64,000 nucleotides of DNA from Vitrella brassicaformis CCMP3155 (Eukaryota; Protista; Chromerida), in assembly GCA_001179505.1 (NCBI GenBank), contig CDMY01000897.1:124001-188000 (forward strand), in the 5' to 3' direction. The position numbers and the translations under genes are program-made. The notes under the pieces are model-generated. The model was given only the letters and a program-made list of their open reading frames with translations. It ran no database searches and had not been told where the DNA came from. Positions 6,001 through 23,401 of the stretch are shown here, in pieces. Position 1 is the first letter of the stretch; every line of letters starts with the position of its first letter.

Positions 6001-9000
6001 TTTGTGTCGACAGCAGAGTCGGCTGGTACCACCCGCGGCAACCCCCTGTATCTCCACTGGATCACTCAAGTGAGAAGCGGTTGCCCGAGCAGAGAGACAG
6101 GCAATCCGCTGCTGCTGTTTGTCCCCTGTTCAGGATCATCCGATTGAGAGGGTCATTCCGGCCGCGTCCATCAGCCTATACGAGTGGAGCCACATCGTTG
6201 TATCGCTGGACGACAAGAACCTCACGGTCATGAAGAACGCAGATGTGGTCTTCCGCGAGCGACTGGACGCACCCATCCCCTTGCAAGCATCGTCCATCCC
6301 TGATCTTTACCTCGGTGCACTCCTGTCGCCTCACCCGATTTCATGCAAATCCTCTGTTTGATCCATGTAGGTTGCCCCGAGTGGGTTGAGGAGAGCGCCA
6401 CGGTGCCCCACGGGTGGCTCTACAGTTTCTCGGTCTACTCCAACCAAGCATTCGACCAAGTCAACGCACAGGCAGTCAAGTACAGAGAAGAGAGCGCTGC
6501 ATGGGCCTCCACACCTGTCCAGCACACGGTGTCGGACCTGCACGGCATCGACGATGTTCCCGACCCCATCCACATGCCGATCGACACCATTAAGGTGTTC
6601 GACTGTCGTGACCAAGTGGCCTCAGACGAGGGCATTGCTGTGCTTGTCGACCTGCTGCGAAGTGACCTGGAGACACAAGTGCAGGCGGCCGCCGATGCGC
6701 TCAAGAATCTTGCCGATCCCACAGTGGCGTCAGGCATGGCGCGGATAGTGAAGGTGCTGCAGAAGTCTGGCGGGCGCGGGTCTCGAGTGCAGCTGCTGGT
6801 GTCGGTGATGGAGAATACAACCAATCCAAAAATCTTCGCTGCCGTAGCTGAGCTGGCAAGCAGCATCCTCAACTGGGAGAATCCGCCGGGAACGCCTGGT
6901 CTTGACATCGAAAATAGGGAGCTGCTCATCTCGAAGATCCTGCGGCCGCTGGAGAAAGACAAGGGAATGAAGAGAGCTCGCGAGCCAGTGATTGTCCTGC
7001 AGCTCCAGGCGTGTCTCGGCAACCCCCGGAACGCAGACATTCTGGCGCGCGACAACATGGGCACTGTGCCGACATTGTTTGAGTTCCTGCAGTCGGAGAA
7101 CCCCACGACGGTCGCCAGGACTCTGCAGCTGATGCTCAACATGCTGCAGCACCCTAAGGGCGAGGCCTGGGCCAAGGACATCTGCTCCAGCGCCAACCTC
7201 AAAACACTCATGCAGCGAAGGGAGTCGGGGGGCTCGAGAGAGATCAAACAGGGATACGAGCGCCTCCTTAACCGGGTCAGTTAGCTCATTCTGATCGATC
7301 GATCGATCGGTGATAGTCATCCATTTGTCTGTTGTCTTTCAGGTGTTGCGGGTGGCAGACTCTGCGACGGTTATGAACACACTGATCAACATGGAGGGCC
7401 TCAGCCCCGAAGAGGAGCGCTTCGTTGCCCAAGTCCTCTACTGCTCCCTCGCTGTGGTCGATGCCTCCAAGAACAGCGGTCCCATCGAGGTTCCACCGCC
7501 CCAGGAGGCGCGAGAGAGCGTCGACGGCATGGCGCCAGTCAAAGTGCTCACGCTTGCTGGCGCCCCGGGCATCAGCGTGTTTGTGCAGCCGATGGTCAGC
7601 ATGCGGGCCCTTGGATCGCGAGTGTACCTGCGCGTCTACACCGACTCGCGAGAGCCGGTGGCTAACGATCCCAACGAGGTCTACTTGTGGGTGGCGCCAT
7701 CTGAATCGGACCTGGAAAGGAGCAAGAACTGCATCATCATACACGTGAGTCATGCCCACAAGATAGCTCTGCAGTATTGTGAAAACGAAGAGAACTGCAT
7801 GTGTGCAGGCTGTGATGCGTCCACACGACCCCCGTGAGGGCGGCAAGGGTGAACGGTGGTCGACGGGACAGATCCACGTCCGCGACGTCCACTTCAGCGA
7901 CAAGGTCTACTACCGGCTGCAGTACCTGGGAGGTAGTAGGCTGCAGCAGTACTACGAGCAGCTCGGAGACCGCAGCGGCCAAGACCCAGACTCACCCGAC
8001 GAGCCGCCACGCCTGCAGCTCATGGCACAGGCACTGGTGAGCCTCAAAATGGACGTCAATGTGGTTGTTCCTGGATTGTGTGTCTCTGTGCTTGGACAAC
8101 AGGACATGGTGATCAATCTTGAGGCCAGAAGGGCTCAGACAAATTGTCAGGAGGTCTTCAAGGTGCCCTTGGGTTTCCCGCGCAACCGCACGGTGGCGTC
8201 GTGGATTCTGCGTCGTCTGGAGGAGATCGAGGATGACATCAGAAAGGAGATGGAGAAGACCAAGAAAGAGGACGAAGAGGAGGAGGGTACGCGCCTCAAT
8301 CTAGTGTGGATCTGTATAGCACGGCAGAGTACATAATGTCTCCTGTTATTGTCTCTTGATGTATGTCGACGTCAGGGCACGAGGGCATCAAGGAGGGCAA
8401 AGAGCAAGAGGAGGAGGCCGAGACAGAGGTCGACGAGTCGGGACTCATCCTTTTCCACCATCGCCTCTTCCGCGCTGCCGGCATGGCCAGGGCTGCCGGC
8501 CAGTCACTGGATGTTCTGCGAGACGGAGAAATAGCCGCATCGGGGCAGGACATCGACGCCGAGGCCCGTGTGGAGGAGCAGAAATCGCAGAAATCGACTT
8601 TCGCATCGTCCTTCAGCCTTTCTGTGGAGGCCAGAAGAAAGCGAGAGGTGCAGCGGTGGATCGCCCAGTGCCTCACGGCCATCACCAAAGGCAACCCCAG
8701 GAAGGTGGCCGAGGACGCCTTCCGCAACCGCGTGCTAAAGCTGATCGACTCGACGGATCCCTTCATCTCACAAGCCATCTGCGAGTGCCTCAACGTCATT
8801 CTCTCGACCTCCTCCCAGCAGTCGTCCGTTTTGTCGGACGAGAATGTGCAGAAGCTGTTGGCGAGCATGGCCAAGGCCTTCGAGCAGCCAGACACCGCAG
8901 AGCGGTCGCTGCTGTCGATGGCCAACATCCTGCAGCGCTACGTGGAGCACATCTCCGCCGGACAAGTTCGGGTTAGCGAGCTGACGAATGAGAAGGCCTC

Positions 9001-12000
9001 TGTGCGAATCGTGCGGCCGCTGCTGGAGCTGTTGAACCGATACGGCAAGTCAGCTGTCTTCTCGATCATCCGGCAGGGCATGGCGCACGACATCATCACT
9101 GCAGACAGCTTCATGTCCGTCTCAGCTGCCAGAATGGTCAGCAAGCGATCGACAGCGAAGGAATCCGCGGAGACGGAAAAAGCGGCACAGCTAAATTTGA
9201 TGCTCGCACCAATGGAGAGGGCCGTCAAACACCTCACGTCCAAGACGCATATCGATGCCACCGCGGCGTATGAGGACCTTGAACTGCTGTTCAATGCCGC
9301 ATCGGTGCTCAAGAACATCTGTCGCACAAGCAGACGAGAGGAACATGCCCAACTGATTCGTTCGGGAATTGTCGGCCGCCTCCTGTTCCTGCTTGACGGG
9401 CTGGGACAGGTGATCCCCAGATGCGCCGATCGGCGACATTTCGACTACGTCGTGCCCGACAATCTGAAGACGCGCGAGGGCATCTTCGAGCACCCAACAT
9501 ACATCGTGCTGCCATACACAGCCAACGTGCGCATCTTCCGGGGCGCGTGTGCGGGCGTCTCCAATATCTGTCAGTGCCTGAGCAACCTGCTCAAGACCGA
9601 CTGCCTGGCACTCATACAGATGCTGTCGCACAACGATGGCGAGGGCATGCAGGCGCTCTACGGCATCCTCCCCGAGGTGAACGTCGATGCCGGCTGCAAC
9701 GATTTTCAGATCACGTCGCGGCCGACCGGGATTGAAGAGATCCGCCTGATGGTGCAAGCACTCATGGCCATCAGCCGTTGCTGCCTGCGGAAGATCCGAG
9801 CGCGAGCGGTGGAGGTGGTGTACCACTGTCTGCACCCTTACGGGCCGAAGGTGCCGCAGTGCCCGGCCAAGGTGCAGGACGTGGTAGAGCCTTGTCACGA
9901 CTACCGTATCTACTACGGCATGCAGGGCGGCGACCAGGCTAAAGACCATCCCGACCCGATTATCCATCTGCCATCGAGACACGAGCGACACTTCACATTC
10001 ACCATGTGGACGCGAACCGACAAGCCGTTGAGGACCGTCATCGATGTGGTTTACGACTGTCATTCCACGTCGATGACCAAGCTGGACCTCGACACAGCCA
10101 TCGAGAAGCACGAAGATAAGGGTCCCATACGGGCAAAACTCAAAGTGCTCAAGAGACAGGACACATACTGGTTCCGATACGAGGAGGAGCGGATCGCCGG
10201 ATACCTGCAGCTGCGGCGGGAGTGGACGTGGCACGGCAGAGACACACAGGCGGTCAAGCTCCTCACAGGGCACAAGGGATGGACCTTCTTCGCATTCCAA
10301 GTCAAGGTCATTGAAAGCCCCATGAAGGGCCGCCCTGACGACGAAAAGACCACAGGTGAACTGAGCCGGAGAAGACGCCATTGATTTAGATGCACCGGTG
10401 TGTCTCTGTGTATATATGTTTGTGTCTCAGCGCATCGTGGCGAGCTGGACTTCCAGGACACCCATGCGACCGCCTACCTGAAGTGTTTCTTCTTCGCCCC
10501 GCACGCCAGATCATCTGCCACGCAGATGCCCAAGGTTGATGAGTTCGAATTTGGCCACCCCAAATACGAGTACTTCAAGCCTGTCGACACGCGAGCCTGG
10601 AAGGCGTCGGCGGCCCTTGAGAGGCGCGACTCACAGATGTCCGACGAGGTGCCTGAGGCGCGGCCCAGCACAATGGTGACTGGCACACTGCCTGGCGTGA
10701 GGAGCAGGGGAGAGCTGTCGGCCGAGCGCGCCAAGTCTGGCATGTCGCTGGGCGGGGTCACCTCCGCGACACAACAGAGGATCCAAGAGCTGCAGAGGTA
10801 TGTAGACACGCTTGGGTGTATATGCATGTTCATCGATCGCTGGCTCTCTCTTCCTCGGTTCTTGTTGGTCGTGCAGCCGCGGTCTCGACTGGCCGACACA
10901 ACGTGAGCCAATGGAGGTGTTCATGCCCCTCCTCTTCCCCTTCCAGATGGAGAAAGACGCTGTGGCCGGACTGGTCGAGAAGTCCCCTCTCACGGTGAGC
11001 GTCCCGGTCTCCTTATGATCGGTTGACGCTTCTGCCTCCTGTTTCTCTGCATGACTTCGATCAGATCCGCATCGGCGAGAAGCGCGAGGAGGTCGTGAAG
11101 GCCATCCGCATGCCCGACGTCTTCGTCACCCACGATGTGGTGCAGCTGCTCGCGCCCTTTTGCGAGAAGCACATGAGCACCGACCTCCTCTCGCGGCTTT
11201 CGTGTCACTGCCTCTACCTCCTCCTCACAGCATTCGCCCGTCCACAGGGCACCGACGCAGGGGAGCTGCAAGACCGGCCCGAGGCAGCCGAGCTGCAGGA
11301 GCGGCTGCGGCAATTCACTTTCCTGCTCGTCCAGTTCCAGCACGTCATCACCAACACGCAGCGGCCGGATGAGCGGCTCGGGGCTCTCAGGATCGTCTGT
11401 GACGCACTCTGGAAGCTCTTCACGCGGGCTCAGAACTTTTACAGCGAGCAGGAGCTGGCCAACCGGCAGAAGAACATCGTCAGCGGCCAGGCGGACAACT
11501 ATTACGACATCCCATTCGTCGAACGGATCATCTCCCTGCTGGCCGAAGTTTGTGTGAGGTAAGCTGGAACACAAAATTACAGAGGACGCCGAAAATCATG
11601 TACGCCGAAAATCATTACAGACGGGACGGGAGCGCCATTCGGCCAGTCCAGGATTTCATAGCACAGGAGCTCCTTGTGGTTCACGAGAAAATGGCCATCC
11701 AGCGCCGTCCCGAGCCAGAGGCATCACACAACATCTACACGCGGTTTCGACAGCAGCGGCTCAAGGACGCCATCAGCGAGATAGACGACAAGCAGGCCAG
11801 CAGAGTTCAGGCCATCCTTATGGTAAGGCAACACAGAGACAGAGACACCTCATTGGTTGATACGTCTTCTGTCTGTCTGTGTGTCCCTTGTCAGAAACTC
11901 GTCGGCAGTCTCAGCGAGAGTAGCATCTTCACTCTCATCCGCATCGGCACATCGATCTTCTTCGAGCCCGCAGAACTGAGCGGAGTCGACGCCGAGTTCC

Positions 12001-15000
12001 ATCCGAGGGCCGACGAGAGGAGGATCCTCTGGGCGCACGACCGGTCGCAGCCAGAAAGGGGCAATGGCGGAGGTAGAGCCACATTCGCCACGGGATTCAC
12101 CAGGAACTTCAGCAGGTACAAGTGGATTCATGGATCCCCCTTTCTTATGTGCAAGTGTGTGTCGCTTTGTTCTGACCTTCATACAGGCTGATGTCCGGCA
12201 GCGTGACAGATGAGGACCGGACTGAACGATCAGTGGCCCTCCGCTATCTCTATCACTCGATGCTTCGTTTGCTCGCGGCCATATGTGCGGACCGCAATGA
12301 GACCAACTCGCTGCGGCTGCGGCAACTCATCCCCCTGCCGGTGGTGCAGAGCCAGCTCGTGCAGCGGGAGGTGCTGGGCTACGCCGGACACAAGTTCGAC
12401 TCGCCTGCCAGGATGGCCAGAGAACTCATCTACCAAAAGGTCCAATTGAGGTCTGTCACAATCAAAGTCTCTGCTTGATTTGTTTCTTTGATCAGACCAT
12501 GTTGGCTCGCTCAGACACCGGTCGACTCAGCCGAGCTCGCAGCCGGGCGTTCTCGCGTGCGTACTCGCAGATCAGTGGGCTGACTAGTCTCGGTGATCAG
12601 CTGGAGGGCGAGGGCCCGCGAGACAAGGCCGATCTGTCAGACATGAACGCCGTCTCAGCCAACATGTCGCTGCTGCTCCATGCTTTCCTCAATCAACCGC
12701 CTTTTGCTGACCAGTCGCACCGCAGCGTTGTGAAGCGCCAAGTCTATCTCGATGGGAGCAGAGCCGACGACGAGGCAGTGACAGAGGTGGTCACTGGCGG
12801 GATGCTGGTGATGAATGGCATGACAATGGAGGACCTGAAGCGACTCTGCTGGATGTGCTCGTGGCAAATGGCGTCGCTGGCCCTGCTGGTCACCGACTTG
12901 TGCGACAAGAAGCTGCTCAAGAAGGCGCCCAGGCAGACCTACACCGACACTTTGTTCGGCTACATCCGGGTGCTCGCACAGGTGATGGCCAAGCTGATTG
13001 GCCTCGGATTCTTCGAGTGCTTCAAATCTGAGGCGGAGAAGTCGTCGGATGCCGATGAGAAGCGGTCCGCAATGCAGATATACGACATGTCGCACGTCAT
13101 CGATTTGTTCACGGCCATGCACAAGGTGCAGAGCTGCTGGGACACAGTCATCTCGCCCGAGTCGAAAGCAGCAGTGACGGAAATGTGCCAGCTCATCAGT
13201 GTGGTGTGCTCGCTCATCATCAACAACCACATCGACCGATTCATGTTCTCGTTCAACTTCTACGTGCCTCCGAGAGTGCGGGCCAGCTTCCCTCCTCGCG
13301 GCCGCAATGTTGCCCTGGAGCGCTTCCAGCAGATGGGCGTCAAGCAGATCGACGAGAAGTGGATGCAGCTGGACCCGATCTTCAGGGAGACGATACAAGA
13401 GCTGACCATCACCTCACTGCCGTGGGAGCGACCCGACGCCACCGAAACCGAGTCGAGGCGCAACCTGTCCCAGTTCGTGCTTGCGCTGCTGGATTTCGCT
13501 GCAATGGGAGACTCCGCTCTGGCTATTGAGGTGACTCACTCAACGTGCACAAAAGGCATTCTTCTCGTTCACAGTGCCATGATTCCTGTCCTCTTTCAGT
13601 CAGTGAAGCTCCTGTCCCATCTGTGTCGGCGCCGGCGTGACTTGATACAGGCGCTAGACGATCTGCAACTGCTGGACACGGGTGATCGGGAGAAGTTCGT
13701 CGCTTTGGAGCCCTGGGTCAAGGAGACGGCCGTGGCCATCAGGGGCATCCAGAACGTGGAGCGAGTGCTGGAGAAGGAGAACCAATGGATAGTCCAGGAG
13801 AAACTCAAGAGCTACACCGTGCCATCTGAGAGCCTGGTGAGCGGGTGCAACGGATACATGAGTGATCGACACGTCTCGGCCTGAGTGTCTAATGGTCAGG
13901 GCGGAGGCGCCTGGCACGAAGAGGACCTTGCTGACGGGGCTGTTGTCCAGGTGGACGAGGAAGGAGCTGCCAGCTACGTGCAGCGCAACCAAACGGTCGT
14001 CATCATACTGCGATCGGCACACATGGCCGGCCTGCACGAGGAAATGAACCAGGACTTTCACATCAGAGGTGTCTCGAGGCGGCGAAAAGCGTTCGGTGCT
14101 GAGGCGGAGGACGTCAAGTTCTCGACCGATCCCCTCATCCTCGTGGGTGCAGCACCTGGCAGAAAGGTGAATAGTCACACACTCACTCAGTCCACCACAT
14201 CAGCTCGCATTTCTCTGACGCTACAGACGCACATCGAGGCCACTGCGGGCCAAATTCCTCTTGGCTTCACCGGTGGCGACGAAAGGGGCCACCTGTATGT
14301 CAATGGCGCTTTGTGGGAGAGCGGCTTTGGCGGCTTCACGACGGGCAGCTATGTTGGTGTGGAGCTGGACTACAGTGAGGCCACCAACCCCGTCATGTAC
14401 CTGTATGTCGACGGCCTGAGAGTGGCGGTGATTCCTCGGATCGAGTCGGAGCTCGTGCCTTGCGTGGGTCTGTCTGGAATGGGGCAGTCGGTCAAGATCG
14501 CCAGAGGACGGCCCAGAAGGGGAAAGGGACTCTTGCTGACAGGGGAAGACGTGAGCACTGATTTCACAAATTTCAAGAGAATCGATGCGTCTCTTTTCCC
14601 CTTGACTACATTTATATGCGTGCAGATGTCTGAGGAGACCTACACTCTTGACTTGGAGTACGATCCCGCCAAGGAGTGTTTCTTCCTCTCATCAACGGGC
14701 GCCACGCAGGAGGTGCCTACAGAGGAGGGCGCGGAGGCCCGACGGCTCCTCTATGAGGGATGGAACGCAGGTACACGGAAAGAGACACACATGCACAAAG
14801 ACAATGTTGTCCTGTGTGCGGCAGCGTATTCAACAACGAGCGGGTCTCGTCGGCAGGAGTGGCTCGACAAGATCAAGGCATTTGGCAAGGGGCCCCGCTT
14901 CATGGTCAACCCCCGCAAGAGCCACACCTGGTGCCTCAACGTCATGACCCTGTCGGACGCATTCATCGAGCGGGCCGAAATCACACGAGGCATACAGGCT

Positions 15001-18000
15001 GCGTCGCGCAAGGCGTCCATGTCGGTCTTCACCGACCGCACGGGACATCTCAGGCGCAAGGTCGTGCGCAACTGGGAGCCTGTCATCCCGGCAAAGGAGG
15101 GTGAGACATCAGCACCGGGCGGCGGCAATGTGACCGAGGTGCGCACGGAGGTGTTGCCTGAGTTTGTATACGGCGCCCGGAAGCTCTTCCTGGTCTTCAA
15201 CGAGCTTGACGCGCACCCCGTGACGCCTGAGACGGACCCGAAGGGTGTGAAGGTGCGGCTGTACCTGACACACATGCTGCCCATCAAGACGGAGAAGGAC
15301 ATGCTCATGAAGCTCTTCGACCACTTCATATCCATCTGCCAGCTGGGCAACGGACACCTGCTCTACTACCACAAAGTGGAGATACTCGCCCTGCAGACTC
15401 TCTCCTTCGTCCTCTCCCCCCTGCCGCACTTGCGTGAGTCTATCCTGGACGACCCCAGCAATCAGCATCTTGCCAGCGAGGACCAGCGCACGCCTTTCCA
15501 CTCTGTCACCCGATTCCTGCGGATCTTCTGCAGCCGCAATCCACAGTATCGTTCGCTGTTCATCCGTCCGGACGTTTTTGAGCTGCTGGTGACCTGCATG
15601 GCCAAGGGATCCAACATGGGCGCGCACATCGGCGTCAGCTCCTTGATGGTGGAAATCTTCGAGAAGAACCCCCACGCCAAGGACTTCGTCACCCAGCAGT
15701 TCGTCAACCAGATGTTGGACGCCCTCCTGCATAACTTCATGACACGGCCCTCGGTGGTGCTGGACTGCATCCGCGTCCTCAACTCGATCGTCACTACTGA
15801 GCGCGACTCCATCAGGAGCAGAGACAACGGCAACATCATCCTCCTAGAACTCCTGAAGCGCAACTCAAGGGAGGCGTCCGATCTGCCATGGCTACCCATC
15901 ACCATAAACGGGTTCGGCATCGTGTCGTCAGCCCTCAAGGAAGACCAGAACGTCATCGTGAGCCAGCTGAGGCGCCTGGCCAATCTGGAGGAGGCGAGGA
16001 AGGCCCTGGCCAAGAGGGGCGAGGAGATCATGTACGAGGAAGAGGCCGACCAACAGAGGCCCCAGCCGCGCCAGAGAAGGGGCGCAGTGCGGTACTCGAG
16101 GGCCCCCAGGCCGAGCACCGCCCGATCTGAGTTTGAAGCCAGCGGCACATACGAGCAGGAGGGCACGCTCACCATGGCTGAGGAAGCGTACGACGAGGAA
16201 GAGGAGTCTCTGAGCCTCAAGACCGCTCTCAACCTCTCACAACTCTTCGTCACGGCCTTCCAGCTGCAGCTCATCGAGTTGGTGCTGCGTTGCTCCTCCT
16301 TCGGACTCAACAAGACCGTCCTCCGCCAAATATCCAACAACATCCACGAGATGCAGGGCGCCCTCGAGCACAAGGGCAAAAAGGGCCGGGCAGATGATGC
16401 GGAAGAGGCGCTGCATCTGCTTAGGGCGCGACAGAGGTACTTTGTGCAGATTGTGCTGTGGCTGTCACAAGAGGAGACGGAGAGCGAAGTGCCGCTGGTC
16501 GTGCAGGACGCCTACCTTCGAATGGCCATCTTCCTCTTGAAGCCGCACGAGATCGAAGAGGTCCTCGACACATACTGGGAGGACGCCCTCGACAACATCG
16601 GACCCACAGAGGTGAGGAAGAGACACACAATTCCGTGAACCTGGGAACAAGCATGCTTCCCGGAACTCTCAGATGGTGCTGCTGCTCCTCCGTTTCTTCG
16701 AACGGTACTTCGCGAGTTTCGCCAGCCAAGCACATCTGTTCAGCCCCCGCATATCGACGGTGGTGGAGACGATCGACACGCGCATCTGCTGGGAGCGGTC
16801 GCCGTACTTTGTCCGTGACCACATCCTGCTGCTGTTCATCCAGCTGCTGCAGATCTACAACCGGCAGAAGACATGGACGGCTGGCTTCCTGGGGCAGGGG
16901 TACATACACAGGGGAGGCAGCATGGAGAGACCGCCCCCACAGACAGCCATCAAGCATAAGTTCAAGTAAGCCAAACAACACATACATGCACAATGCATTC
17001 GTGGATCCGGCGACACTGACTGCGGGTGGGCATTTGTTTGCGTGTAGGGCGACGTTCCACGGTGAGGGCTTTTTCGGAACATCACCTGCTGACGTCACGC
17101 AGGAAGAGACGGCGCTCATGCTGGCAGAAGGGGCTGCCCTCGTGAGCACTGACCAAGAGACAGATGAACCAGACATCACCCCCTCTCCCGTGTGCTTTCT
17201 GTCCAGCCCGAAGAGCAGACGACCGAGGCCAGCACGGGAGCCGGCGGCATCACGCGGCAGGAGACAATGGAGGAGGAGATCCAGTCGGCCGACAACCTGC
17301 TACTGGCGGGGCTTTTCAAGAGCCTGCTGGACCAACGCAAGTGGCGGCACGAAGAGTGGGGCATCAAGCAGGAGATGCTCATCGTACTCCGCATGCTCAC
17401 AAACATGAAACTCACACGCAACCTGGTTGGCATACGAACATCCACCCAACACCTTTCTCTCCTTCGAGCTTGGAACAGCCCTCTTCTCCTTTCATCTGTC
17501 AGCCGACGGAGCCCCAGGGCTTCCAGGAGACCACAGAGCTGCGCAACTGCATTGCTGTGCTGGAGGGCCGCAAGCCACCGTCACCCACAGAAAAGGAGGA
17601 AGAGATCGAGGAAGTGGCGGGTTCACCCACTGCTGGCCCGCCAGGGGCGCCCAGCTCGGCTGGCGTCGATGACGAGCTGTACACTACCCTTACTCAGCCG
17701 CTGCTCACAGGAGGAGGCCCGGATCGTACCCAAGTGGGCATCGGGGGGTCGATTGAGCTGGCGGAGAGACGGGGGCCGATGGCCGTGCCGGACACTGTGG
17801 TGCGTGTGGAGGGGGCCGACAGGACACACAGGAGACGGCGAGCCTCAGGGACGGACGCCGGTGGCCCTGGGGCGGAGGAGGACGACTATGCCGACCTGCT
17901 GTATGAACTCATGGAGCTGCCCGATCAGGTAGGGACATGGGAGATAGACATGCAGACGAGACATGGCACGATGATCGGCTGTGTGCGTGTGTGCACAGGA

Positions 18001-21000
18001 GCTGAACGAGCGGCTGAACGTCGATGTGAACTTGTGGCGAAGGCAGCAGCTGGTGCATCCCACGTTCTATCTGGACCACACGGCAGACAAGATATGGAAC
18101 GTCGAACAAGAGCTCCGCAGGACCCTCTCGAACGTACGCAAATACCACGGCACCAGTAGCCAGATGTTTCTATACATGTGCATGTCCATGCATCGGTCAG
18201 GTGAATTTAGAGCTGTGGAACTCTCAGTATCTGCTGATGGAGTTCCGGTGCGAGGTACACATCAACATCGGAGCGTCACGTGCCGTACACGGCATCTCCT
18301 CGGCCCTCGTGGCACAGCAATCCGACAGGTGGACAGCGGGGCGTCAGGGGGGGAGCAAGGCGACGACTGTTCCATTGAATTCACGTTCTGTGTGTGGCGT
18401 CTGCGTCTAGCCAAGGAGCGGGTCAGCCGACGACGGTTGATGCGATGCCCAGGCAGTATCAGCTGTACTTCGAGATCGAGGCCAACGGAAAAGACACCCT
18501 CTACCTCGAGTGCCTCTTGCCATGTAAGCACTCCATTGATCTACTGAACACGGCGCGTCTGCTTCCAATGCGATGTATCCATGTGCGTGTGCAGCCGAGG
18601 AGTCTCGGCGCAAGATCCGCCTGCAGCTGCTGGGAGTGTCGAGGCTCACCTTCCGCACCCGGTCACTGCATATGGATGCCGTGACGTCTACAAGCGTGAC
18701 GGTGGCCAATCCACGGCTGATGGTCCTGTCTGCGCCCAAGGCCTTCGACCCGGCTGTGGTGCGGGCCGTTGTGGAGGAGGGGCGGTCGCACATGTCGACC
18801 AACTACAGGGAGGGGTCCAAGCAGGTCATTCACTCGCTGCTCCCGCAGTACATACACATGGCCGTCGACATTATCGAACGAGACACTCTCGGTCCGTGGC
18901 CAATCACGCACACAGGCACGTAAAGGGACACGAGCACACAGGTCTCTCTCTGCCTCCTCCTACCAATCAGACTGGAAGCAGCCGCGCTCATCAGGGCGTT
19001 TGAGCGTGTCGGAGGACGCTCAGCTGGAAAAAGAGCACCGGGAGGTGGTCAATATGCTCAGCAGGGCCCTCAGCCATGTCATGAAGAACGAGATGCTCAA
19101 GCGACTCGACGTCAAGGATGAGGAGCAGCTACGGCTCTCGGCCTCAAAGGACCTCTACCCCGTCTTTGAGATACTGACTGAGAAGGCCAGGCCGGGGACA
19201 GACGTCAGTCACCCTACAGCACACACACACAATTATACAACCCTAATGCATGTATCCGATGTCGCCCTTTTGCTGTCTCAGGCGCCGGACCCTGCTCTTC
19301 GTGACGTGCCCGCTCTGTTTTGGGACGTGGAGCCCCACCGGCAAGCCGAGACTATGCTTGGCTGGATCCTCCAGATGTGCCACGTGGTGCGTGTGGTGGC
19401 GTTCCTCAAGGACGACTCGAGAATCGACTTCAGCAAACAATGGGTATCCGAGCGCACCACAGACATCTTCGCGGCACTCCTGTCGACAGGGGAGGATCGG
19501 GCGGCGCGTGCGTCCTGTGTGGCACTCCTCAGCATCCTGCAGGTAATAGAGACGTGCTCATGACATTCACATAGCCTGCTACTGACATCTGTCCAATCAG
19601 GAGCTGCTGGCGCGTGATGAAGATGTGGAGCGTCGTTGGCAAGAGTTCAAGTCCCTCGCGCCAGAGCATGACGTCCTGGAGCCGTCGTTCGCCGTGCAGA
19701 AGGCCCGCTTCCTCTGCCCCTTTTCGTGTCCTGACGTGGGCCCTTCCTCTGTGCATCTCGCCCACCACCTGCGGATGTTCTTCGAGAAGGCTCAGGTGGA
19801 CGTCATCGATCCGATTCGCCTGGTGGAGGTGCTGCTGCAGAGTGCAGACACCACACTGCGCTTCGAGTCGTACAAGCTTGGCTGCAAGATCTTGCAGGAC
19901 GCGCAGCTGAACCTGCAGAATGCCTTTGTGGACGACCCAGACGAGAGAGATCAGCTGCGCAAGTGTTTCCGCTACGAGTTCGAGTCCTTCCCAGACAGGT
20001 TCAACGGCACGCAGCACCAGTCCAACACCGAGGTGCTGAGCATCCTCCTGCGGTTCATCCAGCACCTGTGCGAGTTCCACAACAGGGATCTGCAGGAGTT
20101 CTTTGCATACCAGCTGGAAGGCTACCAGCTGTCACTGCTGGCCGCTGAGGGTGAGATGCTGCCTGGCCGGCAAACCCATCCGGCGGCTGCTGGTGCCCTC
20201 GCGATCGAGGATATCACGGAAAGGGGAGAGGGCAAAGAGCCATCGGCAGCAGAGACGCCAGAGAACCTCGTGCAGTGGAAGTGCGAGACGCTAAAGAGCG
20301 TAATCAGCAAGATAGTGGCTGACCAGGAGTGGCAAGTGTCCATGGGCAACCGCAGGGCGCAGTACATCCTCCTCCAACAAATATTTGAAACCGGCACAGA
20401 GATGATTCAAGGTCACACACTCTCACACCCCCTCACACACATAATGGGCTGCATCAATGGTGCGTTGCTGTTGTCCATTGATGTTTCAGGCCCTTGCACG
20501 CAGAACCAGCGCATCTTCCTTCGCAAGGGCATCTGTCGCGACATCGAAAAGCTGTTCGAGCTCCAGAGGAAAGACGAGGAGGCGTTTCGTAACCTGATGG
20601 CGGACAACGAAGACTTGCGCGAGTCCTGGATGGACCTCTGCAAGACCATGCGGCTGATGGAGATCGCCATCCTGCGGTTCCTGTACTCCCTGCTGGAAGA
20701 GGATCTCCTTAATGTGGGCGACGACAACTTCCTCGAGAAGCAGCAGAGCATCCTGCAGCACAAGAACGAGACCATCCGGCGAATGGTGGAGGAAATGAAC
20801 CCCCGCACGATGTGCAGGAAGATCATCACTCATTGGAACCTGAGCTCCGAGGGCGCCGACGACCAGATGAAGGTGCCGCACATCGACGACGCCGCTTTTT
20901 TGCCCACCACTGAAGGAGACATAATCCGGCCGAAGACGGAGATAGAATCTAAGGTGACCAGACCGACCAGAACACATCCATCTGTGTCTTGCCCTGACTG

Positions 21001-23290
21001 GCTGCGGCTCGCTGTTCGTCTTCAGGTGTATCCTCTGGCCGAGCAGGAGGTCCATTCGCTGGAGATCTGCTTCTGGTGCTACTCACTCTTCGACGCCATC
21101 TACAACGAGTCCCTCCTGGCCTACAATGTGGAGCTGCCGCGAGAGGTGCTCATGACATTCCACTCGGAGGGCCCGCGGTTCCAGAAGGGCGACTGGGCGG
21201 CAGCCAAGGCCAAAATATACGACTTCTTCAAAGAAAGCGTCACCAGGAAGGTACGAGAGCCGTCCGTCGAGTGCGTGTCTCGTGTCTCATCCCTCTTACG
21301 TGTGTAGACGCACGCCAAGTACTTGCACTATCTTTTCGGGCGTGTGGAAGTGGTGCGCGGCACACGGCTGCAGCGGCTGTACTTCCTGGTGCCCGAGTCT
21401 GTCAGAGCCCTCAAGGACCACTCACTCGTTAAAGCGTGGCAGGAGTCCTTCGTGCAAGAGGTCAAGAGGTCGTCGCCCGAGGAGAAGATCGATGGCTTTT
21501 CGGATCGTGTGATGAGCGAGTACATCACATTCGTGGAACACCAATACGAGCTGCTCAAGCGCCCATGGCCCCTCAACAGGGCGGGAGAGGTCATTTCCTT
21601 TTCTCTCAATGCCATTATCTTCCTGACCATCCTGATCAACATTTTCCTTATCGCCTTCTACAACAAGGCCTACACCGCCGACGATCCGGAGGCGCAGTGG
21701 CACTCCTTCGGGGAAGAGGCGTGGAAGAGCATCCTGTTCAGCACACTGTCCTACAGCCATTTACTGTTCTCGCTCTTGTGGACGCTGTTCTATATCGTTT
21801 CCTATAGTGGGTGGACGATGTCGGCGCAGATGCAGCACTGGAAGGCAAACCACCCGAAGCTGTCGTATATACTCACTTACTGGCCGATCCGCTTCGCCCT
21901 GAGTCTGTACTTCTTCTTTGCGGACAATGTGCTGCTGTATCGCTTTATATACGTGACCTTCTCGTACCTGGGCTGCCGAGTAAGGTTCTGCCCATTTGCC
22001 TATCCGTCGGTCCCCATTTCTCTGATGTCTTGTGTTTCAGGTGAATCCGCTGTTTTTCTCTTTTCACGTGATCGACATCTGTACTCACTTCCAGATCTTG
22101 CAGAAGGTCATGGAGGCCGTCATGAGCACCTACACACAGCTCATGGGTCAGTTACTGAGGTGGATGGATGCAGGGGGATGCAGACACACTCCAAGAGCAA
22201 ATCGTGTGCATGCGTGTGTGTGTGTGTGTGTGTATGCGCCAGGTACGATCTTCCTGGGGTTTTCTGTGTCGTACTGCTTTGTGGTCGTCGGTTTCATGGC
22301 ATTCGGACATGGATATGACTTCGCCGATAAGGACAATTACGAGTGAGGGAGTGAGAACCGCCACACGGCCCGGCTACTCGTGTCTCTCTGCTTATCTGCT
22401 TCTCAGGTGCACGAGTCTGGTTACGTGTCTGAAGGGCCATCTGGACTACGGTTTCCGCTCCGCGCCTTTGTGGCGTGAAAGCCACCAGGACTGGACGACC
22501 TTTTTCTTCGACTACTTTTACTATTTGTTCATCATCCTCATCCTGTCGGCCATCATCAGCGGTATCATCATCGACACCTTCGCGGAGAAGCGAAACGAGG
22601 CCGCTGCCAAGAGCGACGACATGCTCGGCAAGTGCTTTATCTGCTCGCTTGATAAGACGCTGCTTGAGAGGAAGAGAATACAGGTATGTGGTGCGGTGCC
22701 CCACCACCACACCCACACACACAGAGAAAGAGAGAGAGAGAGAGACAACGCAACACACGCCACGCCCCCCCTCTCCCCTCCCTCCCTCCCTCCCTCCCTC
22801 TGTGTCTCTCTCTGTCTCTCTCTGTGTGTGTGTGTGTGTGTGTCAGTTTTCCGACCACATATATGAGGACCACTACATGTGGGCGTACGCGCGTTTCCTC
22901 CTCTACCTGCACCAGACCAGCGCAGCCGACCTCACCGGCCCAGAGAGCTACATCAAGGAGCAGTGGCACAAGAATGACCGCAGCTTCTTCCCACTTGGCC
23001 GCTGCATGGCGCTAGAGGCACGGGAGCTGTCCGAGACGGCCTCGCTCATGGACAGGGCCGTCACTCTGAAGGATTTCGAGGGCTTGCGTGCGAGCATGGG
23101 TCGGCTGACCGATGATGAGGAGACGATAAAGCACAAGGTGGATGTGCTGGATGGGAAGATCGGCGAGCTGGCCGGCAGGATGGCCGGCCTCATCAGCGAA
23201 CAGAAACGAATGATGCAGCAGCAAGGTGGGTTCGTCCGTGAACGGGACACGCCCATGGAGGCGCAGGAGCTTTCTGTGTGCGCATTCGTG

Positions 23291-23326
<36 letters not shown>

Positions 23327-23401
23327 TGGATGTGTGTGTGTCTATCAGAGATCATGGACGTCCCTGCTTCTGCACTGGGGCCGAGGGACTCCATCAGATA
23401 A
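1..23401 (+). CDS. Giant multi-exon IP3R/ryanodine-receptor-superfamily Ca2+-release-channel-like protein (5' end outside the window; roughly 6000+ aa encoded here)
   Basis: Reading frame is open from base 1 (STKGGEEFWVKIVPAFLFEK). The GT-AG junctions I checked join in frame (e.g. introns 134-201, 433-502, 1631-1701, 7276-7342, 14167-14226) through to TAA at 23399-23401. The C-terminal part has IP3R/RyR hallmarks: RIH-associated LLRFIQHLCEFHNRDLQEFF and TEMIQGPCTQNQ; GRVEVVRGTRLQRLYFLVP; several TM helices; pore helix ECTSLVTC; inner helix ILSAIISGIIIDTFAEKR; zinc site KCFICSLDK...FSDHIYEDHYMWAY; coiled-coil tail. Confidence 0.88.
1160..1625 (+). other. LamG/concanavalin-A-like jelly-roll domain 1 of the channel
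   Basis: FAYSVWVYP...WSHLVLVVERKKAVAYVNG...CYVG...FPGYVYRLTYHDEGL follows the LamG pattern (F-T-x-S-x-W, W-x-H-V-x-V, Y-V-N-G, G-x-I-x-x-V-x-I-Y). Confidence 0.7.
2060..2600 (+). other. LamG-like domain 2 of the channel
   Basis: GEWLHIVVMNDG...WDGKQQ...CTIGCDF...CDMAFLRVWS pattern. Confidence 0.6.
3110..3480 (+). other. SPRY-like beta-sandwich (tentative)
   Basis: GCTVTLQLCFADQTLWVSAFVNRKIV...VVPAAFVS...IHF resembles the SPRY core (G-D-x-I-G-x-x-L-D...F-Y-x-N-G...Y-P-A-V-S). Confidence 0.4.
5860..6460 (+). other. LamG-like domain 3 of the channel (split by introns)
   Basis: WTMSFHFFL...EWSHIVVSLDDKNLTVMKN...DLYLG...HGWLYSFSVYSNQAF. Confidence 0.65.
6620..7275 (+). other. Armadillo/HEAT-like helical repeats in the channel
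   Basis: GIAVLVDLLRSDLETQVQAAADALKNLA and GTVPTLFEFLQSENPTTVARTLQLMLNM match ARM repeat spacing. Confidence 0.6.
9960..10500 (+). other. Possible fourth LamG-like domain
   Basis: RHFTFTMWTR...KGWTFFAFQV...GELDF pattern; weaker than the other three. Confidence 0.4.
11430..12450 (+). other. RIH (RyR/IP3R homology)-like domain
   Basis: ANRQKNIV...ERIISLLAEV and YLYHSMLRLLAAICADRNETNSLRLRQLIPLPVVQSQL resemble the IP3R RIH segments ([39 protein letters not shown]). Confidence 0.55.
14230..14520 (+). other. SPRY/B30.2 domain in the channel
   Basis: LGFTGGDERGHLYVNG...GFTTGSYVGVELDY...MYLYVDGLRVAV...LVPCVGLSGMGQSVKI. Confidence 0.7.
20030..20700 (+). other. RIH-associated domain
   Basis: ILLRFIQHLCEFHNRDLQEFF and QQIFETGTEMIQGPCTQNQRIF match IP3R [20 protein letters not shown] and QTLESLTEYCQGPCHENQ. 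Confidence 0.85.
21590..22900 (+). other. Ion-transport TM/pore region and C-terminal C2H2 zinc site of the channel
   Basis: Hydrophobic helices, pore ECTSLVTCLKGHLDYGFRSAP (GFRSAP at about 22450-22467), inner helix GIIIDTFAEKR, CFIC...H...H. Confidence 0.85.

What the first reader, a model, noticed from the sequence alone, without database searches (positions are those of the whole stretch)
22407..22590. Pore lacks the GGG(I/V)GD selectivity filter: GFRSAP instead
Seen: ECTSLVTCLKGHLDYGFRSAPLWRESHQDWTTFFFDYFYYLFII. Established: IP3R reads C-x-TLLMC...HGLRSGGGVGD and RyR GVRAGGGIGD, and this loop forms the filter. Here the flanking pore helix and inner helix are conserved, but the GGGxGD is replaced by AP and the loop is shorter. 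Inference: different selectivity or conductance, or a non-conducting subunit.
Basis: partly seen in the sequence, partly recalled or inferred. Interest (0 to 1): 0.7.

Follow-up and report, generated by a model that had tools for sequence, protein, structure and literature searches.

The report
Calcium-release channel with a rebuilt pore loop
This exon of a giant IP3R/RyR-type channel in an alveolate alga really lacks the classic GGGxGD pore filter, and its short substitute motif is shared by a large, ancient group of protist channels whose ion permeation nobody seems to have measured.

Summary
Exon 22407-22683 (+) encodes CTSLVTCLKGHLDYGFRSAPLWRESHQDW, then S6 and a CxxC. S6 and the C-terminal domain match RyR and IP3R structures. 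GGGxGD is absent, and the stretch from G-x-R to S6 is 8 residues shorter.

It is not an artefact. Spliced contigs from two studies and one MMETSP transcript read through the loop unchanged, so no hidden exon restores the filter.

It is not private to this gene. Of 128 aligned channel domains, 97 carry H-x-D-Y-G-Φ-R-x-x-P-Φ-W (Φ = hydrophobic residue) and 31 carry G-Φ-R-x-GGG[IVL]G[DE]. With the loop columns removed, holding the short-loop rows as one clade is not rejected (p-AU 0.74). Members come from dinoflagellates, a ciliate, Rhizaria, Rhodelphis, CRuMs (the protists Diphylleia and Rigifila) and choanoflagellates.

The motif is as conserved as the S6 gate. The S6 gate residues, the zinc finger and the Ca2+-sensor motifs are kept in this gene.

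Best reading: a working, probably Ca2+-activated cation channel with a differently built luminal filter. A dead subunit is unlikely. Its selectivity is untested.

Paramecium CRC-V and CRC-VI were already reported to have aberrant filters. I found no description of this motif or clade in the papers I could search. I class it as a new variant of a known kind.

The parts
22407..22683 (+). Pore exon. It holds the pore helix, the short filter loop, S6 and the CxxC half of the C-terminal zinc finger. Codons are in phase from 22408.
   Evidence: Translation. PDB matches to RyR and IP3R at E about 1e-8. Spliced contig X6 record 14 covers it with 0 differences.
22438..22473 (+). Clade signature H-L-D-Y-G-F-R-S-A-P-L-W (residues 11-22 of the exon). 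It takes the place of ...G-L-R-S-G-G-G-V-G-D.
   Evidence: Column counts in A1: H 45/51, D 44/51, Y 41/51, G 51/51, R 39/51, P 47/51, W 38 plus F 10 of 51. Across 97 short-loop rows: H 77, D 78, Y 71, G 93, R 64, P 85.
22417..22455 (+). Predicted pore helix (exon residues 4-16).
   Evidence: AF2 model of the exon with a 51-row alignment, helix 4-16. The same element is helix 88-98 in the relative's model, mean pLDDT 86.7.
22456..22491 (+). Twelve-residue loop RSAPLWRESHQD between the pore helix and S6. The part after W varies between relatives but is enriched in D, E and S.
   Evidence: coil 17-28. Column entropies of 3.2-3.7 bits at positions 23-31.
22492..22629 (+). S6 inner helix, including the gate region SGIIIDTF and the cytosolic acidic residues D56 and E60.
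   Evidence: Helix 29-74. D56 is invariant and G52, I53-55 and F58 are at least 90% conserved. It aligns to RyR2 4843-4895.
22633..22644 (+). C-F-I-C, the first half of the C-terminal zinc finger.
   Evidence: C76 and C79 are invariant in A1. It aligns to the CFIC of RyR and IP3R.
22243..22342 (+). Exon with S5 and a very short S5-to-P linker (…GFMAFGHGYDFADKDNY, then the split E codon).
   Evidence: ORF reading. Joints 22146|22243 (inferred from 206 nt of contig length) and 22342|22407. The Y-x-F of the linker is nearly invariant in A2.
22041..22146 (+). Exon with S4 and the S4-S5 linker (VNPLFFSFHVIDI…).
   Evidence: Joint 21979|22041 in X1 and X6. Profile match to IP3R2 2348-2424.
21308..21979 (+). 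Exon with the pre-TM region and TM1-TM3.
   Evidence: ORF. Spliced contig piece 21306-21979 with the cut shifted by 2. Colinear with Polarella P0008.
22847..23223 (+). C-terminal domain exon. It holds H-x4-H (22856-22873), LTGPES (22931-22948) and a coiled-coil tail.
   Evidence: P0001 alignment. Contig pieces 22853-23223. H180 and H185 are invariant in A2.
23347..23401 (+). Last coding exon (EIMDVPASALGPRDSIR, then the stop).
   Evidence: P0001. Contig pieces of X1 and X6.
20066..20083 (+). L-C-E-F-H-N. This is the first Ca2+-sensor glutamate motif and lies within the RIH_assoc match.
   Evidence: It aligns to IP3R3 LLCE(1882)NHN. Pfam RIH_assoc E 2.1e-7, 31.2 bits against a cut-off of 28.5.
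20396..20509 (+). T-E-M-I-Q-G | P-C-T-Q-N-Q. This is the second Ca2+-sensor motif. It is split by the in-frame 78-nt intron 20412-20489.
   Evidence: ORF reading and motif comparison with P0164 LTEYCQGPCHENQ. The GT..AG joint skipping 78 nt is seen in X1.
5036..23401 (+). Minimum extent of the gene. It is colinear with a 5345-aa dinoflagellate-type relative.
   Evidence: tblastn of P0158 residues 226-5281 onto window 5036-23092, in order. Polarella P0008 (3331 aa) is colinear with 11095-23227.

Best explanation
The exon belongs to a giant gene of the IP3R/RyR superfamily. The gene is colinear with a 5345-aa relative, is RyR-sized, has introns and is transcribed. It comes from an alveolate, probably a chromerid such as Vitrella; the organism was not verified.

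Shown:
- The protein keeps the S6 gate (G-I-I-I-D-T-F), the cytosolic acidic residues D56 and E60, and the C-x2-C…H-x4-H zinc finger.
- It keeps the three sequence motifs that form the activating Ca2+ site in RyR and IP3R structures: LCExHN, TExxQGPC and TGPES.
- Its pore loop lacks GGGxGD, is 8 residues shorter, and reads H-L-D-Y-G-F-R-S-A-P-L-W.
- That motif defines one large, taxonomically wide clade and is as conserved as the gate.

Inferred:
- The protein forms a tetrameric, Ca2+-activated intracellular cation channel that gates like RyR and IP3R.
- Its luminal mouth is built differently. The short stretch after the pore helix (R-S-A-P-Φ-W, Φ = hydrophobic residue) forms the narrow part. 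The Pro-Φ-Trp is pinned to the conserved Y-x-F of the short S5-P linker. The conserved Asp of D-Y-G, not the Asp of GGGxGD, is the candidate negative ring.
- Conductance and Ca2+/monovalent selectivity are therefore expected to differ from the canonical channels, but conduction is expected.
For: - Sequence and splicing. RNA-type contigs from two studies and MMETSP protein P0001 read through the loop.
- Homology: the exon matches RyR and IP3R at E about 1e-8. The clade profile A2 matches IP3R2 at 1.7e-69 and RyR1/3 at about 1e-66. RIH_assoc scores above its Pfam cut-off.
- Fold: the AF2 model of a relative's S4-to-CTD segment has pLDDT 86.7. Its best Foldseek matches are IP3R3, IP3R1 and RyR1, with TM-score 0.6-0.65 and probability 1.0.
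- Clade: 97 short-loop rows against 31 canonical rows. With the loop columns dropped, the free tree needs 5 changes of the trait against 27.7 for shuffled labels. The tree that holds all 91 short-loop rows together is 21.8 lnL better than the free tree, p-AU 0.738.
- Taxa: Polarella, Durusdinium, Protocruzia, Paulinella, Amorphochlora, Rhodelphis, Diphylleia, Rigifila and three Salpingoeca species.
- Conservation of the motif and the gate.
- Ca2+-sensor motifs.
- Mini-sheet: in the model, P-V-W (104-106) and Y-G-F (75-77) are both scored as strand or bridge.
- Full IP3R/RyR N-terminal domains occur in clade members from Rhodelphis and Salpingoeca.
Against: - No functional data exist for any member that I could find.
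- No acidic residue is conserved in the loop after Trp, so Ca2+ selectivity may be weak or absent.
- Only monomer models were possible and I had no coordinates, so which residues face the pore axis is inferred.
- HMMER and MAFFT place the 8-9 residue gap differently, so it is unresolved whether the filter was deleted or substituted.
- The tree rests on 147 columns and a quick search. Its sample is biased to the best 150 hits of a short-loop query, and it holds no true RyR.
- A few canonical rows (P0118, P0139, P0106, P0168) fall among short-loop rows in the free tree.
- No IP3-binding core, MIR or RIH domain was detected in this gene's own ORFs, so the activating ligand besides Ca2+ is unknown.
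Confidence: 0.68

Rival explanations
1. The clade conducts, but not Ca2+. It would be a monovalent-cation (for example K+ counter-ion) or otherwise differently selective channel that has kept RyR/IP3R gating.
For: The GGGxGD aspartate, needed for Ca2+ permeation in IP3R according to the literature cited in PMC3213138 and PMC7399828, has no conserved counterpart. Positions 23-31 after Trp are highly variable. The loop is 8 residues shorter.
Against: A conserved Asp (D13, 44/51) sits one turn before the loop. Acidic residues are enriched, though not fixed, at positions 24-26. The cytosolic D56 and E60 and the Ca2+-sensor motifs are kept. Canonical RyR and IP3R are themselves poorly selective cation channels (PMC7399828).
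Confidence: 0.2
2. It is a non-conducting or modulatory subunit. It would either co-assemble with a canonical-filter paralogue or act as a scaffold.
For: The canonical filter is absent. Another IP3R/RyR-family gene is noted elsewhere in this genome (earlier finding s1-218477; not examined). CO.IP3R-B of Capsaspora is reported not to bind IP3 or release Ca2+; I recall this from Alzayady 2015, which is not held in the library.
Against: The replacement motif is as conserved as the gate across very distant eukaryotes, which is not what a relaxed, dead pore would show. The gate isoleucines, D56, the zinc finger and the Ca2+ sensor are retained. The loop is modelled with high confidence (pLDDT about 87-90).
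Confidence: 0.1
3. It is an artefact: a mis-assembly, a missed micro-exon or alternative exon, or a pseudogene.
For: None was found. The only weakness is that the reads tool served contigs, which drop rare isoforms.
Against: Two genomic assemblies (X2, X3) and two spliced assemblies (X1, X6) agree base for base over 22407-22683. P0001 gives the same protein. The loop lies inside one uninterrupted exon. Ninety-seven relatives have the same architecture.
Confidence: 0.02

Closest known systems
Mammalian IP3 receptors (IP3R1-3; e.g. PDB 9ymz, 3jav, 6dqj)
   Same: They share the S4-S5-P-S6 channel domain, the S6 gate G-[IV]-I-I-D-T-F, the C-x2-C…H-x4-H zinc finger, the TGPESY motif, LCExHN and TExxQGPC, and a C-terminal coiled coil. 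The clade profile matches at E 1.7e-69 and the fold matches at TM-score about 0.63.
   Different: IP3R has G-L-R-S/N-G-G-G-V-G-D and a long S5-P luminal loop. Here the filter block is missing (8 residues fewer) and the S5-P linker is only about 14 residues. No IP3-binding core, MIR or RIH domain was detected in this gene. This protein is about twice as long.
Ryanodine receptors (RyR1-3; e.g. PDB 5gky, 5go9, 9c1e)
   Same: They match the profile about as well as IP3R does (E about 1e-66). The size class of about 5000 aa is shared. The pore helix pattern C-x5-C-x3-H-x3-G-x-R resembles RyR's CDDMMTCYLFHMYVGVR (RyR string from memory). The S5-P linker is short in both.
   Different: RyR has G-G-G-I-G-D-E. 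No RyR-repeat domain was detected here, and the only SPRY-like signal is a sub-threshold Laminin_G_3 hit (26.5 bits against a cut-off of 27.6).
Paramecium Ca2+-release channels CRC-V and CRC-VI (Ladenburger & Plattner 2011, PMC3213138)
   Same: They are alveolate members of the superfamily. CRC-VI is reported to have 'practically no similarity' in the filter region, and CRC-V a shortened distance between pore and TMD6. A ciliate, Protocruzia, has members of the short-loop clade.
   Different: Whether CRC-V or CRC-VI carry H-x-D-Y-G-Φ-R-x-x-P-Φ-W or belong to this clade was not tested, because I had no Paramecium sequences. That paper describes no conserved replacement motif.
Salpingoeca rosetta 'cardiac ryanodine receptor' XP_004992365.1 (P0045) and its paralogue P0180
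   Same: They are members of the short-loop clade (…HLYYGFYSSPVF…) and carry Ins145_P3_rec, RIH, MIR and RIH_assoc domains. This shows that the short loop occurs in otherwise complete IP3R/RyR architectures.
   Different: They are about 2500 aa, the D of D-Y-G is replaced by Y, and the LCExHN and TExxQG motifs were not found by pattern search. The database name is automatic and is not evidence of RyR function.
Polarella glacialis CAE8725672.1 (P0008) and dinoflagellate relatives (Durusdinium P0159; P0158, 5345 aa)
   Same: These are the nearest relatives. They are 52-57% identical over the pore exon, colinear with the window gene over 12-18 kb, and fall with it in a 20-row clade with 98% SH-aLRT support.
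   Different: They are unnamed or uncharacterised proteins with no functional data.

Membership tests
IP3R/RyR superfamily of intracellular Ca2+-release channels | RIH-associated domain ahead of the channel domain | tested here: met
   PF08454 RIH_assoc, E 2.1e-7, 31.2 bits against a cut-off of 28.5, in window:19625-21307.
IP3R/RyR superfamily of intracellular Ca2+-release channels | C-terminal six-TM channel domain with a homologous S5, pore helix and S6 | tested here: met
   The exon matches RyR and IP3R at E about 1e-8. The clade profile matches at E 1e-66 to 1e-69. A relative's model matches IP3R and RyR transmembrane domains at TM-score 0.6-0.65.
IP3R/RyR superfamily of intracellular Ca2+-release channels | C-terminal zinc finger C-x2-C … H-x4-H after S6 | tested here: met
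   CFIC at 22633-22644 and HIYEDH at 22856-22873. These columns are invariant in A1 and A2.
IP3R/RyR superfamily of intracellular Ca2+-release channels | Activating Ca2+-site residues (Glu of LCExHN; Glu and Gln of TExxQGPC; Thr of TGxES) | tested here: met
   The window has LCEFHN, TEMIQG|PCTQNQ across a confirmed intron, and LTGPES. The motif identities were checked against goose IP3R P0164. Their role in Ca2+ binding is taken from published structures, from memory.
IP3R/RyR superfamily of intracellular Ca2+-release channels | Selectivity filter G-G-G-[IV]-G-D after the pore helix | tested here: not met
   The window reads G-F-R-S-A-P-L-W-R-E. The 8-9 residue filter block is absent here and in 97 of 128 aligned relatives.
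IP3 receptor proper (IP3-gated) | N-terminal suppressor domain and IP3-binding core (Ins145_P3_rec, MIR, RIH) | tested here: inconclusive
   None was detected in 19 long ORF segments of the gene. The closest relative, Polarella, also shows only RIH_assoc and Ion_trans, while Rhodelphis and Salpingoeca members do have these domains. Divergence beyond Pfam's reach is not excluded.
Ryanodine receptor proper | RyR repeat domains and SPRY domains in a protein of about 5000 aa | tested here: not met
   The size class is met, since the gene is colinear with a 5345-aa relative. No RyR-repeat or SPRY hit was found. There is only a sub-threshold Laminin_G_3 hit and one Arm repeat.
Short-loop clade defined here (H-x-D-Y-G-Φ-R-x-x-P-Φ-[WF]) | The motif itself, plus an 8-9 residue shorter stretch from pore helix to S6 | tested here: met
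   The window has H-L-D-Y-G-F-R-S-A-P-L-W. In the tree, P0001 (the same gene) sits in a 20-row short-loop clade with 98% support.
Short-loop clade defined here (H-x-D-Y-G-Φ-R-x-x-P-Φ-[WF]) | Single origin of the trait on a tree built without the trait's own columns | tested here: inconclusive
   The constrained one-clade tree is not rejected and is 21.8 lnL better than the free tree (p-AU 0.738). Support rests on 147 columns, a biased sample, no true RyR and no root.
IP3R-B subfamily (Alzayady et al. 2015) | Orthology with Capsaspora and invertebrate IP3R-B | not tested
   The paper is not held and no IP3R-B sequence was available. No metazoan protein appeared among the named short-loop members.
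Paramecium CRC-V / CRC-VI | Sequence membership of those groups | not tested
   I had only the paper's text. No Paramecium sequence was fetched.

The most novel reading that the evidence does not exclude
The H-x-D-Y-G-Φ-R-x-x-P-Φ-W proteins are an ancient third lineage of the IP3R/RyR superfamily, possibly as old as the split of the main eukaryotic supergroups. Their selectivity filter would be structurally distinct and glycine-free, giving ion selectivity or conductance unlike any characterised Ca2+-release channel. In some alveolates (dinoflagellates, Vitrella-like algae) they would be the main store-release channel.
Probability: 0.3. Interest if true: 0.75.

Novelty: new variant of a known kind. 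Interest (0 to 1): 0.58.

Why it matters
Every solved RyR and IP3R pore, and nearly all mutational work on permeation, rests on the GGG[IV]GD filter. This finding shows a large natural group of homologues spread across at least five eukaryotic supergroups. These homologues keep the gate, the Ca2+ sensor and the zinc finger, but replace the filter with a shorter, equally conserved motif built around Pro and Trp.

That is a ready-made natural experiment on how this superfamily sets conductance and Ca2+ selectivity. It yields concrete targets for cryo-EM and electrophysiology in Salpingoeca rosetta, Polarella and this alga.

It also bears on Ca2+ signalling in alveolates. Apicomplexans have no recognisable IP3R or RyR, while their free-living relative Vitrella does (PMC8572010). 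Knowing that one of that relative's channels is of this divergent type sharpens what should be looked for in parasites. It also warns that pore-motif-based searches and annotations will mislabel or miss such proteins; the Salpingoeca members are currently named 'cardiac ryanodine receptor'.

Tried and rejected
- Hidden or alternative exon restoring GGGxGD: rejected. There is no joint inside 22407-22683 in the spliced contigs of two studies, and P0001 is continuous.
- Pseudogene: rejected. The frame is open, the gene is expressed and the motif is conserved.
- My first regex classing of 'canonical' against 'short' rows was wrong. It caught GGG strings outside the loop. I replaced it with classing by alignment columns.
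- Word-index searches (search for homologous proteins) reached few distant relatives and no IP3R-B, so the link to IP3R-B could not be tested.
- Alzayady 2015 could not be read. Searches for chromerid IP3R literature gave only the presence/absence statement in PMC8572010. Reviews of ER Ca2+ evolution and of diatom channels do not discuss this pore.
- The ESM Atlas feature search returned only generic Ion_trans clusters.
- Pfam on 19 ORF segments found no MIR, RIH or SPRY domain.
- Resemblance of P-Φ-W to the E-x-W of Cav/Nav P-loops: considered and dropped. Pro sits where the selectivity Glu would be, and the weak Cav matches of the profile lie in S4-S5, not in the loop.
- Organism identity: not established by any tool. 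Run and organism names were coded. 'Vitrella-like chromerid' is inferred from GC of about 58%, presence in MMETSP, other readers' notes and PMC8572010.
Full report
**1. The observation**

Window 22408-22683 (+) translates without a stop to CTSLVTCLKGHLDYGFRSAPLWRESHQDWTTFFFDYFYYLFIILILSAIISGIIIDTFAEKRNEAAAKSDDMLGKCFICSLDKTLLERKRIQ. The surrounding DNA is eukaryotic. It has about 58% GC, GT..AG introns, and (GT)n, (CT)n and (CCCT)n runs inside introns.

The exon alone matches the S6 and CxxC regions of RyR1/2/3 and IP3R1/2/3 among solved structures at E about 1e-8. An upstream ORF carries Pfam RIH_assoc above its curated cut-off. The gene is therefore a member of the IP3R/RyR superfamily. It has no GGGxGD. 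From the conserved G-x-R to the F-D that opens S6 there are 18 residues, against 26 in IP3R.

**2. It is real and expressed as written**

Four public runs hold this stretch. Two of them (X2, X3) are genomic contigs of about 30 kb that run straight through. The other two (X6, X1, from different studies) are contigs with GT..AG joints, which means spliced RNA.

Allowing for the tool's '+2' cut shifts, X6 record 14 joins these exons:
- …20953 | 21026-21250
- 21308-21979
- 22041-22146
- 22243-22342
- 22407-22683
- about 22847-23223
- 23347 onward

It covers 22407-22683 with no differences and no internal joint. A 224-aa MMETSP transcript product (P0001) reads DYGFRSAPLWRESHQDW…S6…CTD…stop and maps to the same exons. 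Because contigs drop rare isoforms, a minor alternative form is not excluded.

**3. The gene**

A 3331-aa Polarella glacialis protein is colinear with window 11095-23227. A 5345-aa relative is colinear from 5036 to 23092. The gene therefore spans at least 18 kb and encodes an RyR-sized protein.

Pfam finds only RIH_assoc, a weak Ion_trans match, one Arm repeat and a sub-threshold Laminin_G_3 match in its ORF segments. No MIR, RIH, IP3-binding core, SPRY or RyR repeat was found.

The gating hardware is nevertheless present:
- The S6 gate reads G-I-I-I-D-T-F, with D56 invariant in the clade.
- The zinc finger is C-F-I-C … H-I-Y-E-D-H.
- All three motifs of the activating Ca2+ site known from RyR1 and IP3R3 structures are kept. 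LCEFHN aligns to IP3R3 E1882. TEMIQG|PCTQNQ is split by an in-frame 78-nt intron that an X1 contig removes. LTGPES is in the C-terminal domain.

The corresponding motifs in a goose IP3R (P0164) are LLCENHN, LTEYCQGPCHENQ and TEYTGPES.

**4. It is a clade signature, not a private change**

An exhaustive phmmer search of the exon against 1.84 billion cluster representatives gave 1358 hits, and 150 were returned. I aligned 128 channel-domain segments running from the pore helix into the C-terminal domain.
- 97 have the short loop. Counts for H-Φ-D-Y-G-Φ-R-x-x-P-Φ-W (Φ = hydrophobic residue) are H 77, D 78, Y 71, G 93, R 64 and P 85 of 97.
- 31 have G-Φ-R-x-G-G-G-[IVL]-G-[DE] or close variants.

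In a 51-row alignment headed by the window exon, G15 is invariant. P20 is 47/51, H11 45/51, D13 44/51, Y14 41/51 and W22 38 (plus 10 F) of 51. These entropies equal those of the gate residues. Positions 23-31 are highly variable (3.2-3.7 bits) but rich in D, E and S.

A maximum-likelihood tree built without the loop columns needs 5 changes of the trait, against 27.7 for shuffled labels. When all 91 short-loop rows are held as one clade the likelihood is 21.8 units higher than in the free quick search, and the AU test does not reject that tree (p 0.738). The window gene (as P0001) sits in a 20-row clade with 98% SH-aLRT support, together with the dinoflagellate proteins.

Named members come from:
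- Polarella and Durusdinium (dinoflagellates)
- Protocruzia (a ciliate)
- Paulinella and Amorphochlora (Rhizaria)
- Rhodelphis
- Diphylleia and Rigifila (CRuMs)
- Salpingoeca rosetta, S. urceolata and S. kvevrii (choanoflagellates)

The Rhodelphis and Salpingoeca members carry Ins145_P3_rec, RIH, MIR and RIH_assoc. The short loop therefore occurs in otherwise complete IP3R/RyR architectures.

Caveats on the tree:
- It has only 147 columns and used a quick search.
- The sample is biased toward the query's kin.
- No true RyR is included and there is no root, so 'deleted' and 'ancestral' cannot be told apart.
- Four canonical rows lie among short-loop rows in the free tree.

**5. Structure**

A profile of the clade matches IP3R2 (E 1.7e-69) and RyR1/3 (about 1e-66) about equally well.

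AlphaFold2 on the Polarella S4-to-CTD segment with a 55-row alignment gives mean pLDDT 86.7. The elements are S5 (46-70), a short strand at Y-G-F (75-77), the pore helix (88-98), a coil G-F-R-S-G, a short strand at P-V-W (104-106), and S6 (113-158). The loop has pLDDT of about 87-90. Foldseek puts IP3R3, IP3R1 and RyR1 first, with TM-score 0.6-0.65 and probability 1.0.

The window exon folded on its own (pLDDT 78) gives a pore helix at 4-16, a loop at 17-28 and S6 at 29-74.

The models suggest a compact luminal mouth. In it, the Pro-Φ-Trp after the pore helix pairs with the nearly invariant Y-x-F of a very short S5-P linker. I had no coordinates and no tetramer, so which atoms line the pore is inference. 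MAFFT treats the difference as a deletion of GGGxGDxxR. HMMER instead aligns S-A-P-V-W-x-x onto N-G-G-G-V-G-D and shortens the later loop. This is unresolved.

**6. Mechanism and rivals**

The most likely reading (about 0.68) is a homotetrameric, Ca2+-activated intracellular cation channel that gates like RyR and IP3R. Its filter would be formed by R-S-A-P-Φ-W, possibly with the conserved Asp of D-Y-G as the negative ring. Conductance and selectivity would therefore differ from the canonical channels.

The rivals are:
- A channel that conducts cations but not Ca2+ (about 0.2). In its favour, no fixed acidic residue follows the Trp.
- A non-conducting or modulatory subunit (about 0.1). Against it, the motif is as conserved as the gate, and the gate and sensor are retained.
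- An artefact (about 0.02).

None of the permeation claims can be tested with these tools.

**7. What was known**

The canonical filter is GGGVGD in IP3R and GGGIGD in RyR. Some oomycete homologues have GGGLG[GS] (PMC7399828).

In Paramecium, only three CRC-IV proteins have the full motif. [quoted passage not shown] The authors left permeation open (PMC3213138).

Apicomplexans lack IP3R and RyR homologues (PMC3194816). Vitrella has IP3R/RyR, while Chromera and the apicomplexans do not (PMC8572010).

I found no paper in the searchable library that describes the H-x-D-Y-G-Φ-R-x-x-P-Φ-W motif or treats these proteins as a clade. Alzayady et al. 2015 (IP3R-A, IP3R-B and RyR) and Mackrill 2012 could not be read, so prior description there is not excluded. 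The relation to IP3R-B is untested.

**8. Verdict**

This is a new variant of a known kind: a conserved alternative pore loop in the IP3R/RyR superfamily, found here in a giant alveolate channel.

Interest is moderate to high for ion-channel and protist Ca2+-signalling specialists, because it defines concrete targets for structure and electrophysiology. It is tempered by the prior notes on aberrant ciliate filters and by the lack of any functional evidence.

Exons were used one at a time by reference, and the natural transcript product P0001 and database relatives stood in for the joined protein.

Noticed in passing
window 20412-20489 and about 20954-21025: Two short introns (78 and 72 nt) are multiples of three and hold no stop, so the ORF 19586-21304 stays open through them. 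An ORF-based reading would add 26 and 24 spurious residues. The first intron splits the Ca2+-sensor motif TEMIQG|PCTQNQ. Retaining either intron would give in-frame insertions.
   Followed up: partly
window 430-11000 (+): The long ORF segments upstream belong to the same gene at least from 5036, where they are colinear with residues 226-2200 of the 5345-aa relative P0158. They hold one Arm repeat (in 6304-7281) and a sub-threshold Laminin_G_3/ConA-like match (in 443-1657), not MIR, RIH or an IP3-binding core.
   Followed up: partly
window 22202-22243, 22697-22852, 23281-23346: Introns of the channel domain are filled with (GT)n, (GA)n and (CCCT)n microsatellites. The reads tool skips them, and genomic contigs of X2 and X3 break there.
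   Followed up: no
P0118, P0139 (unnamed proteins): Two proteins with a canonical G-L-R-[AS]-G-G-G-[VI]-G-[ED] filter have a short-loop-type S6 (…IAIVSGIIID…). They fall among short-loop rows in the free tree. They may be intermediates or a sign that the trait changed more than once.
   Followed up: no
model m4d0a68767c09 (P0008:3017-3308), residues 75-77 and 104-106: The model scores Y-G-F (S5-P linker) and P-V-W (after the pore helix) as strand or bridge. This suggests a two-stranded mini-sheet at the luminal mouth. Y75 is at least 90% conserved in the clade.
   Followed up: partly
another piece of the same genome (earlier finding s1-218477): A second IP3R/RyR-family gene is noted in this genome. 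Its filter type, canonical or short-loop, would bear on the heteromer hypothesis.
   Followed up: no
P0151 (Polarella glacialis CAE8599927.1), residues 226-304: The longer Polarella model has a DUF3431 match in an N-terminal 520-aa extension that has no counterpart in the window. It may be a gene-model fusion.
   Followed up: no
P0045, P0180 (Salpingoeca rosetta): Both short-loop choanoflagellate proteins are named 'cardiac ryanodine receptor' in NCBI and UniProt, although they lack GGGIGD and RyR repeats. The automatic name is misleading.
   Followed up: partly
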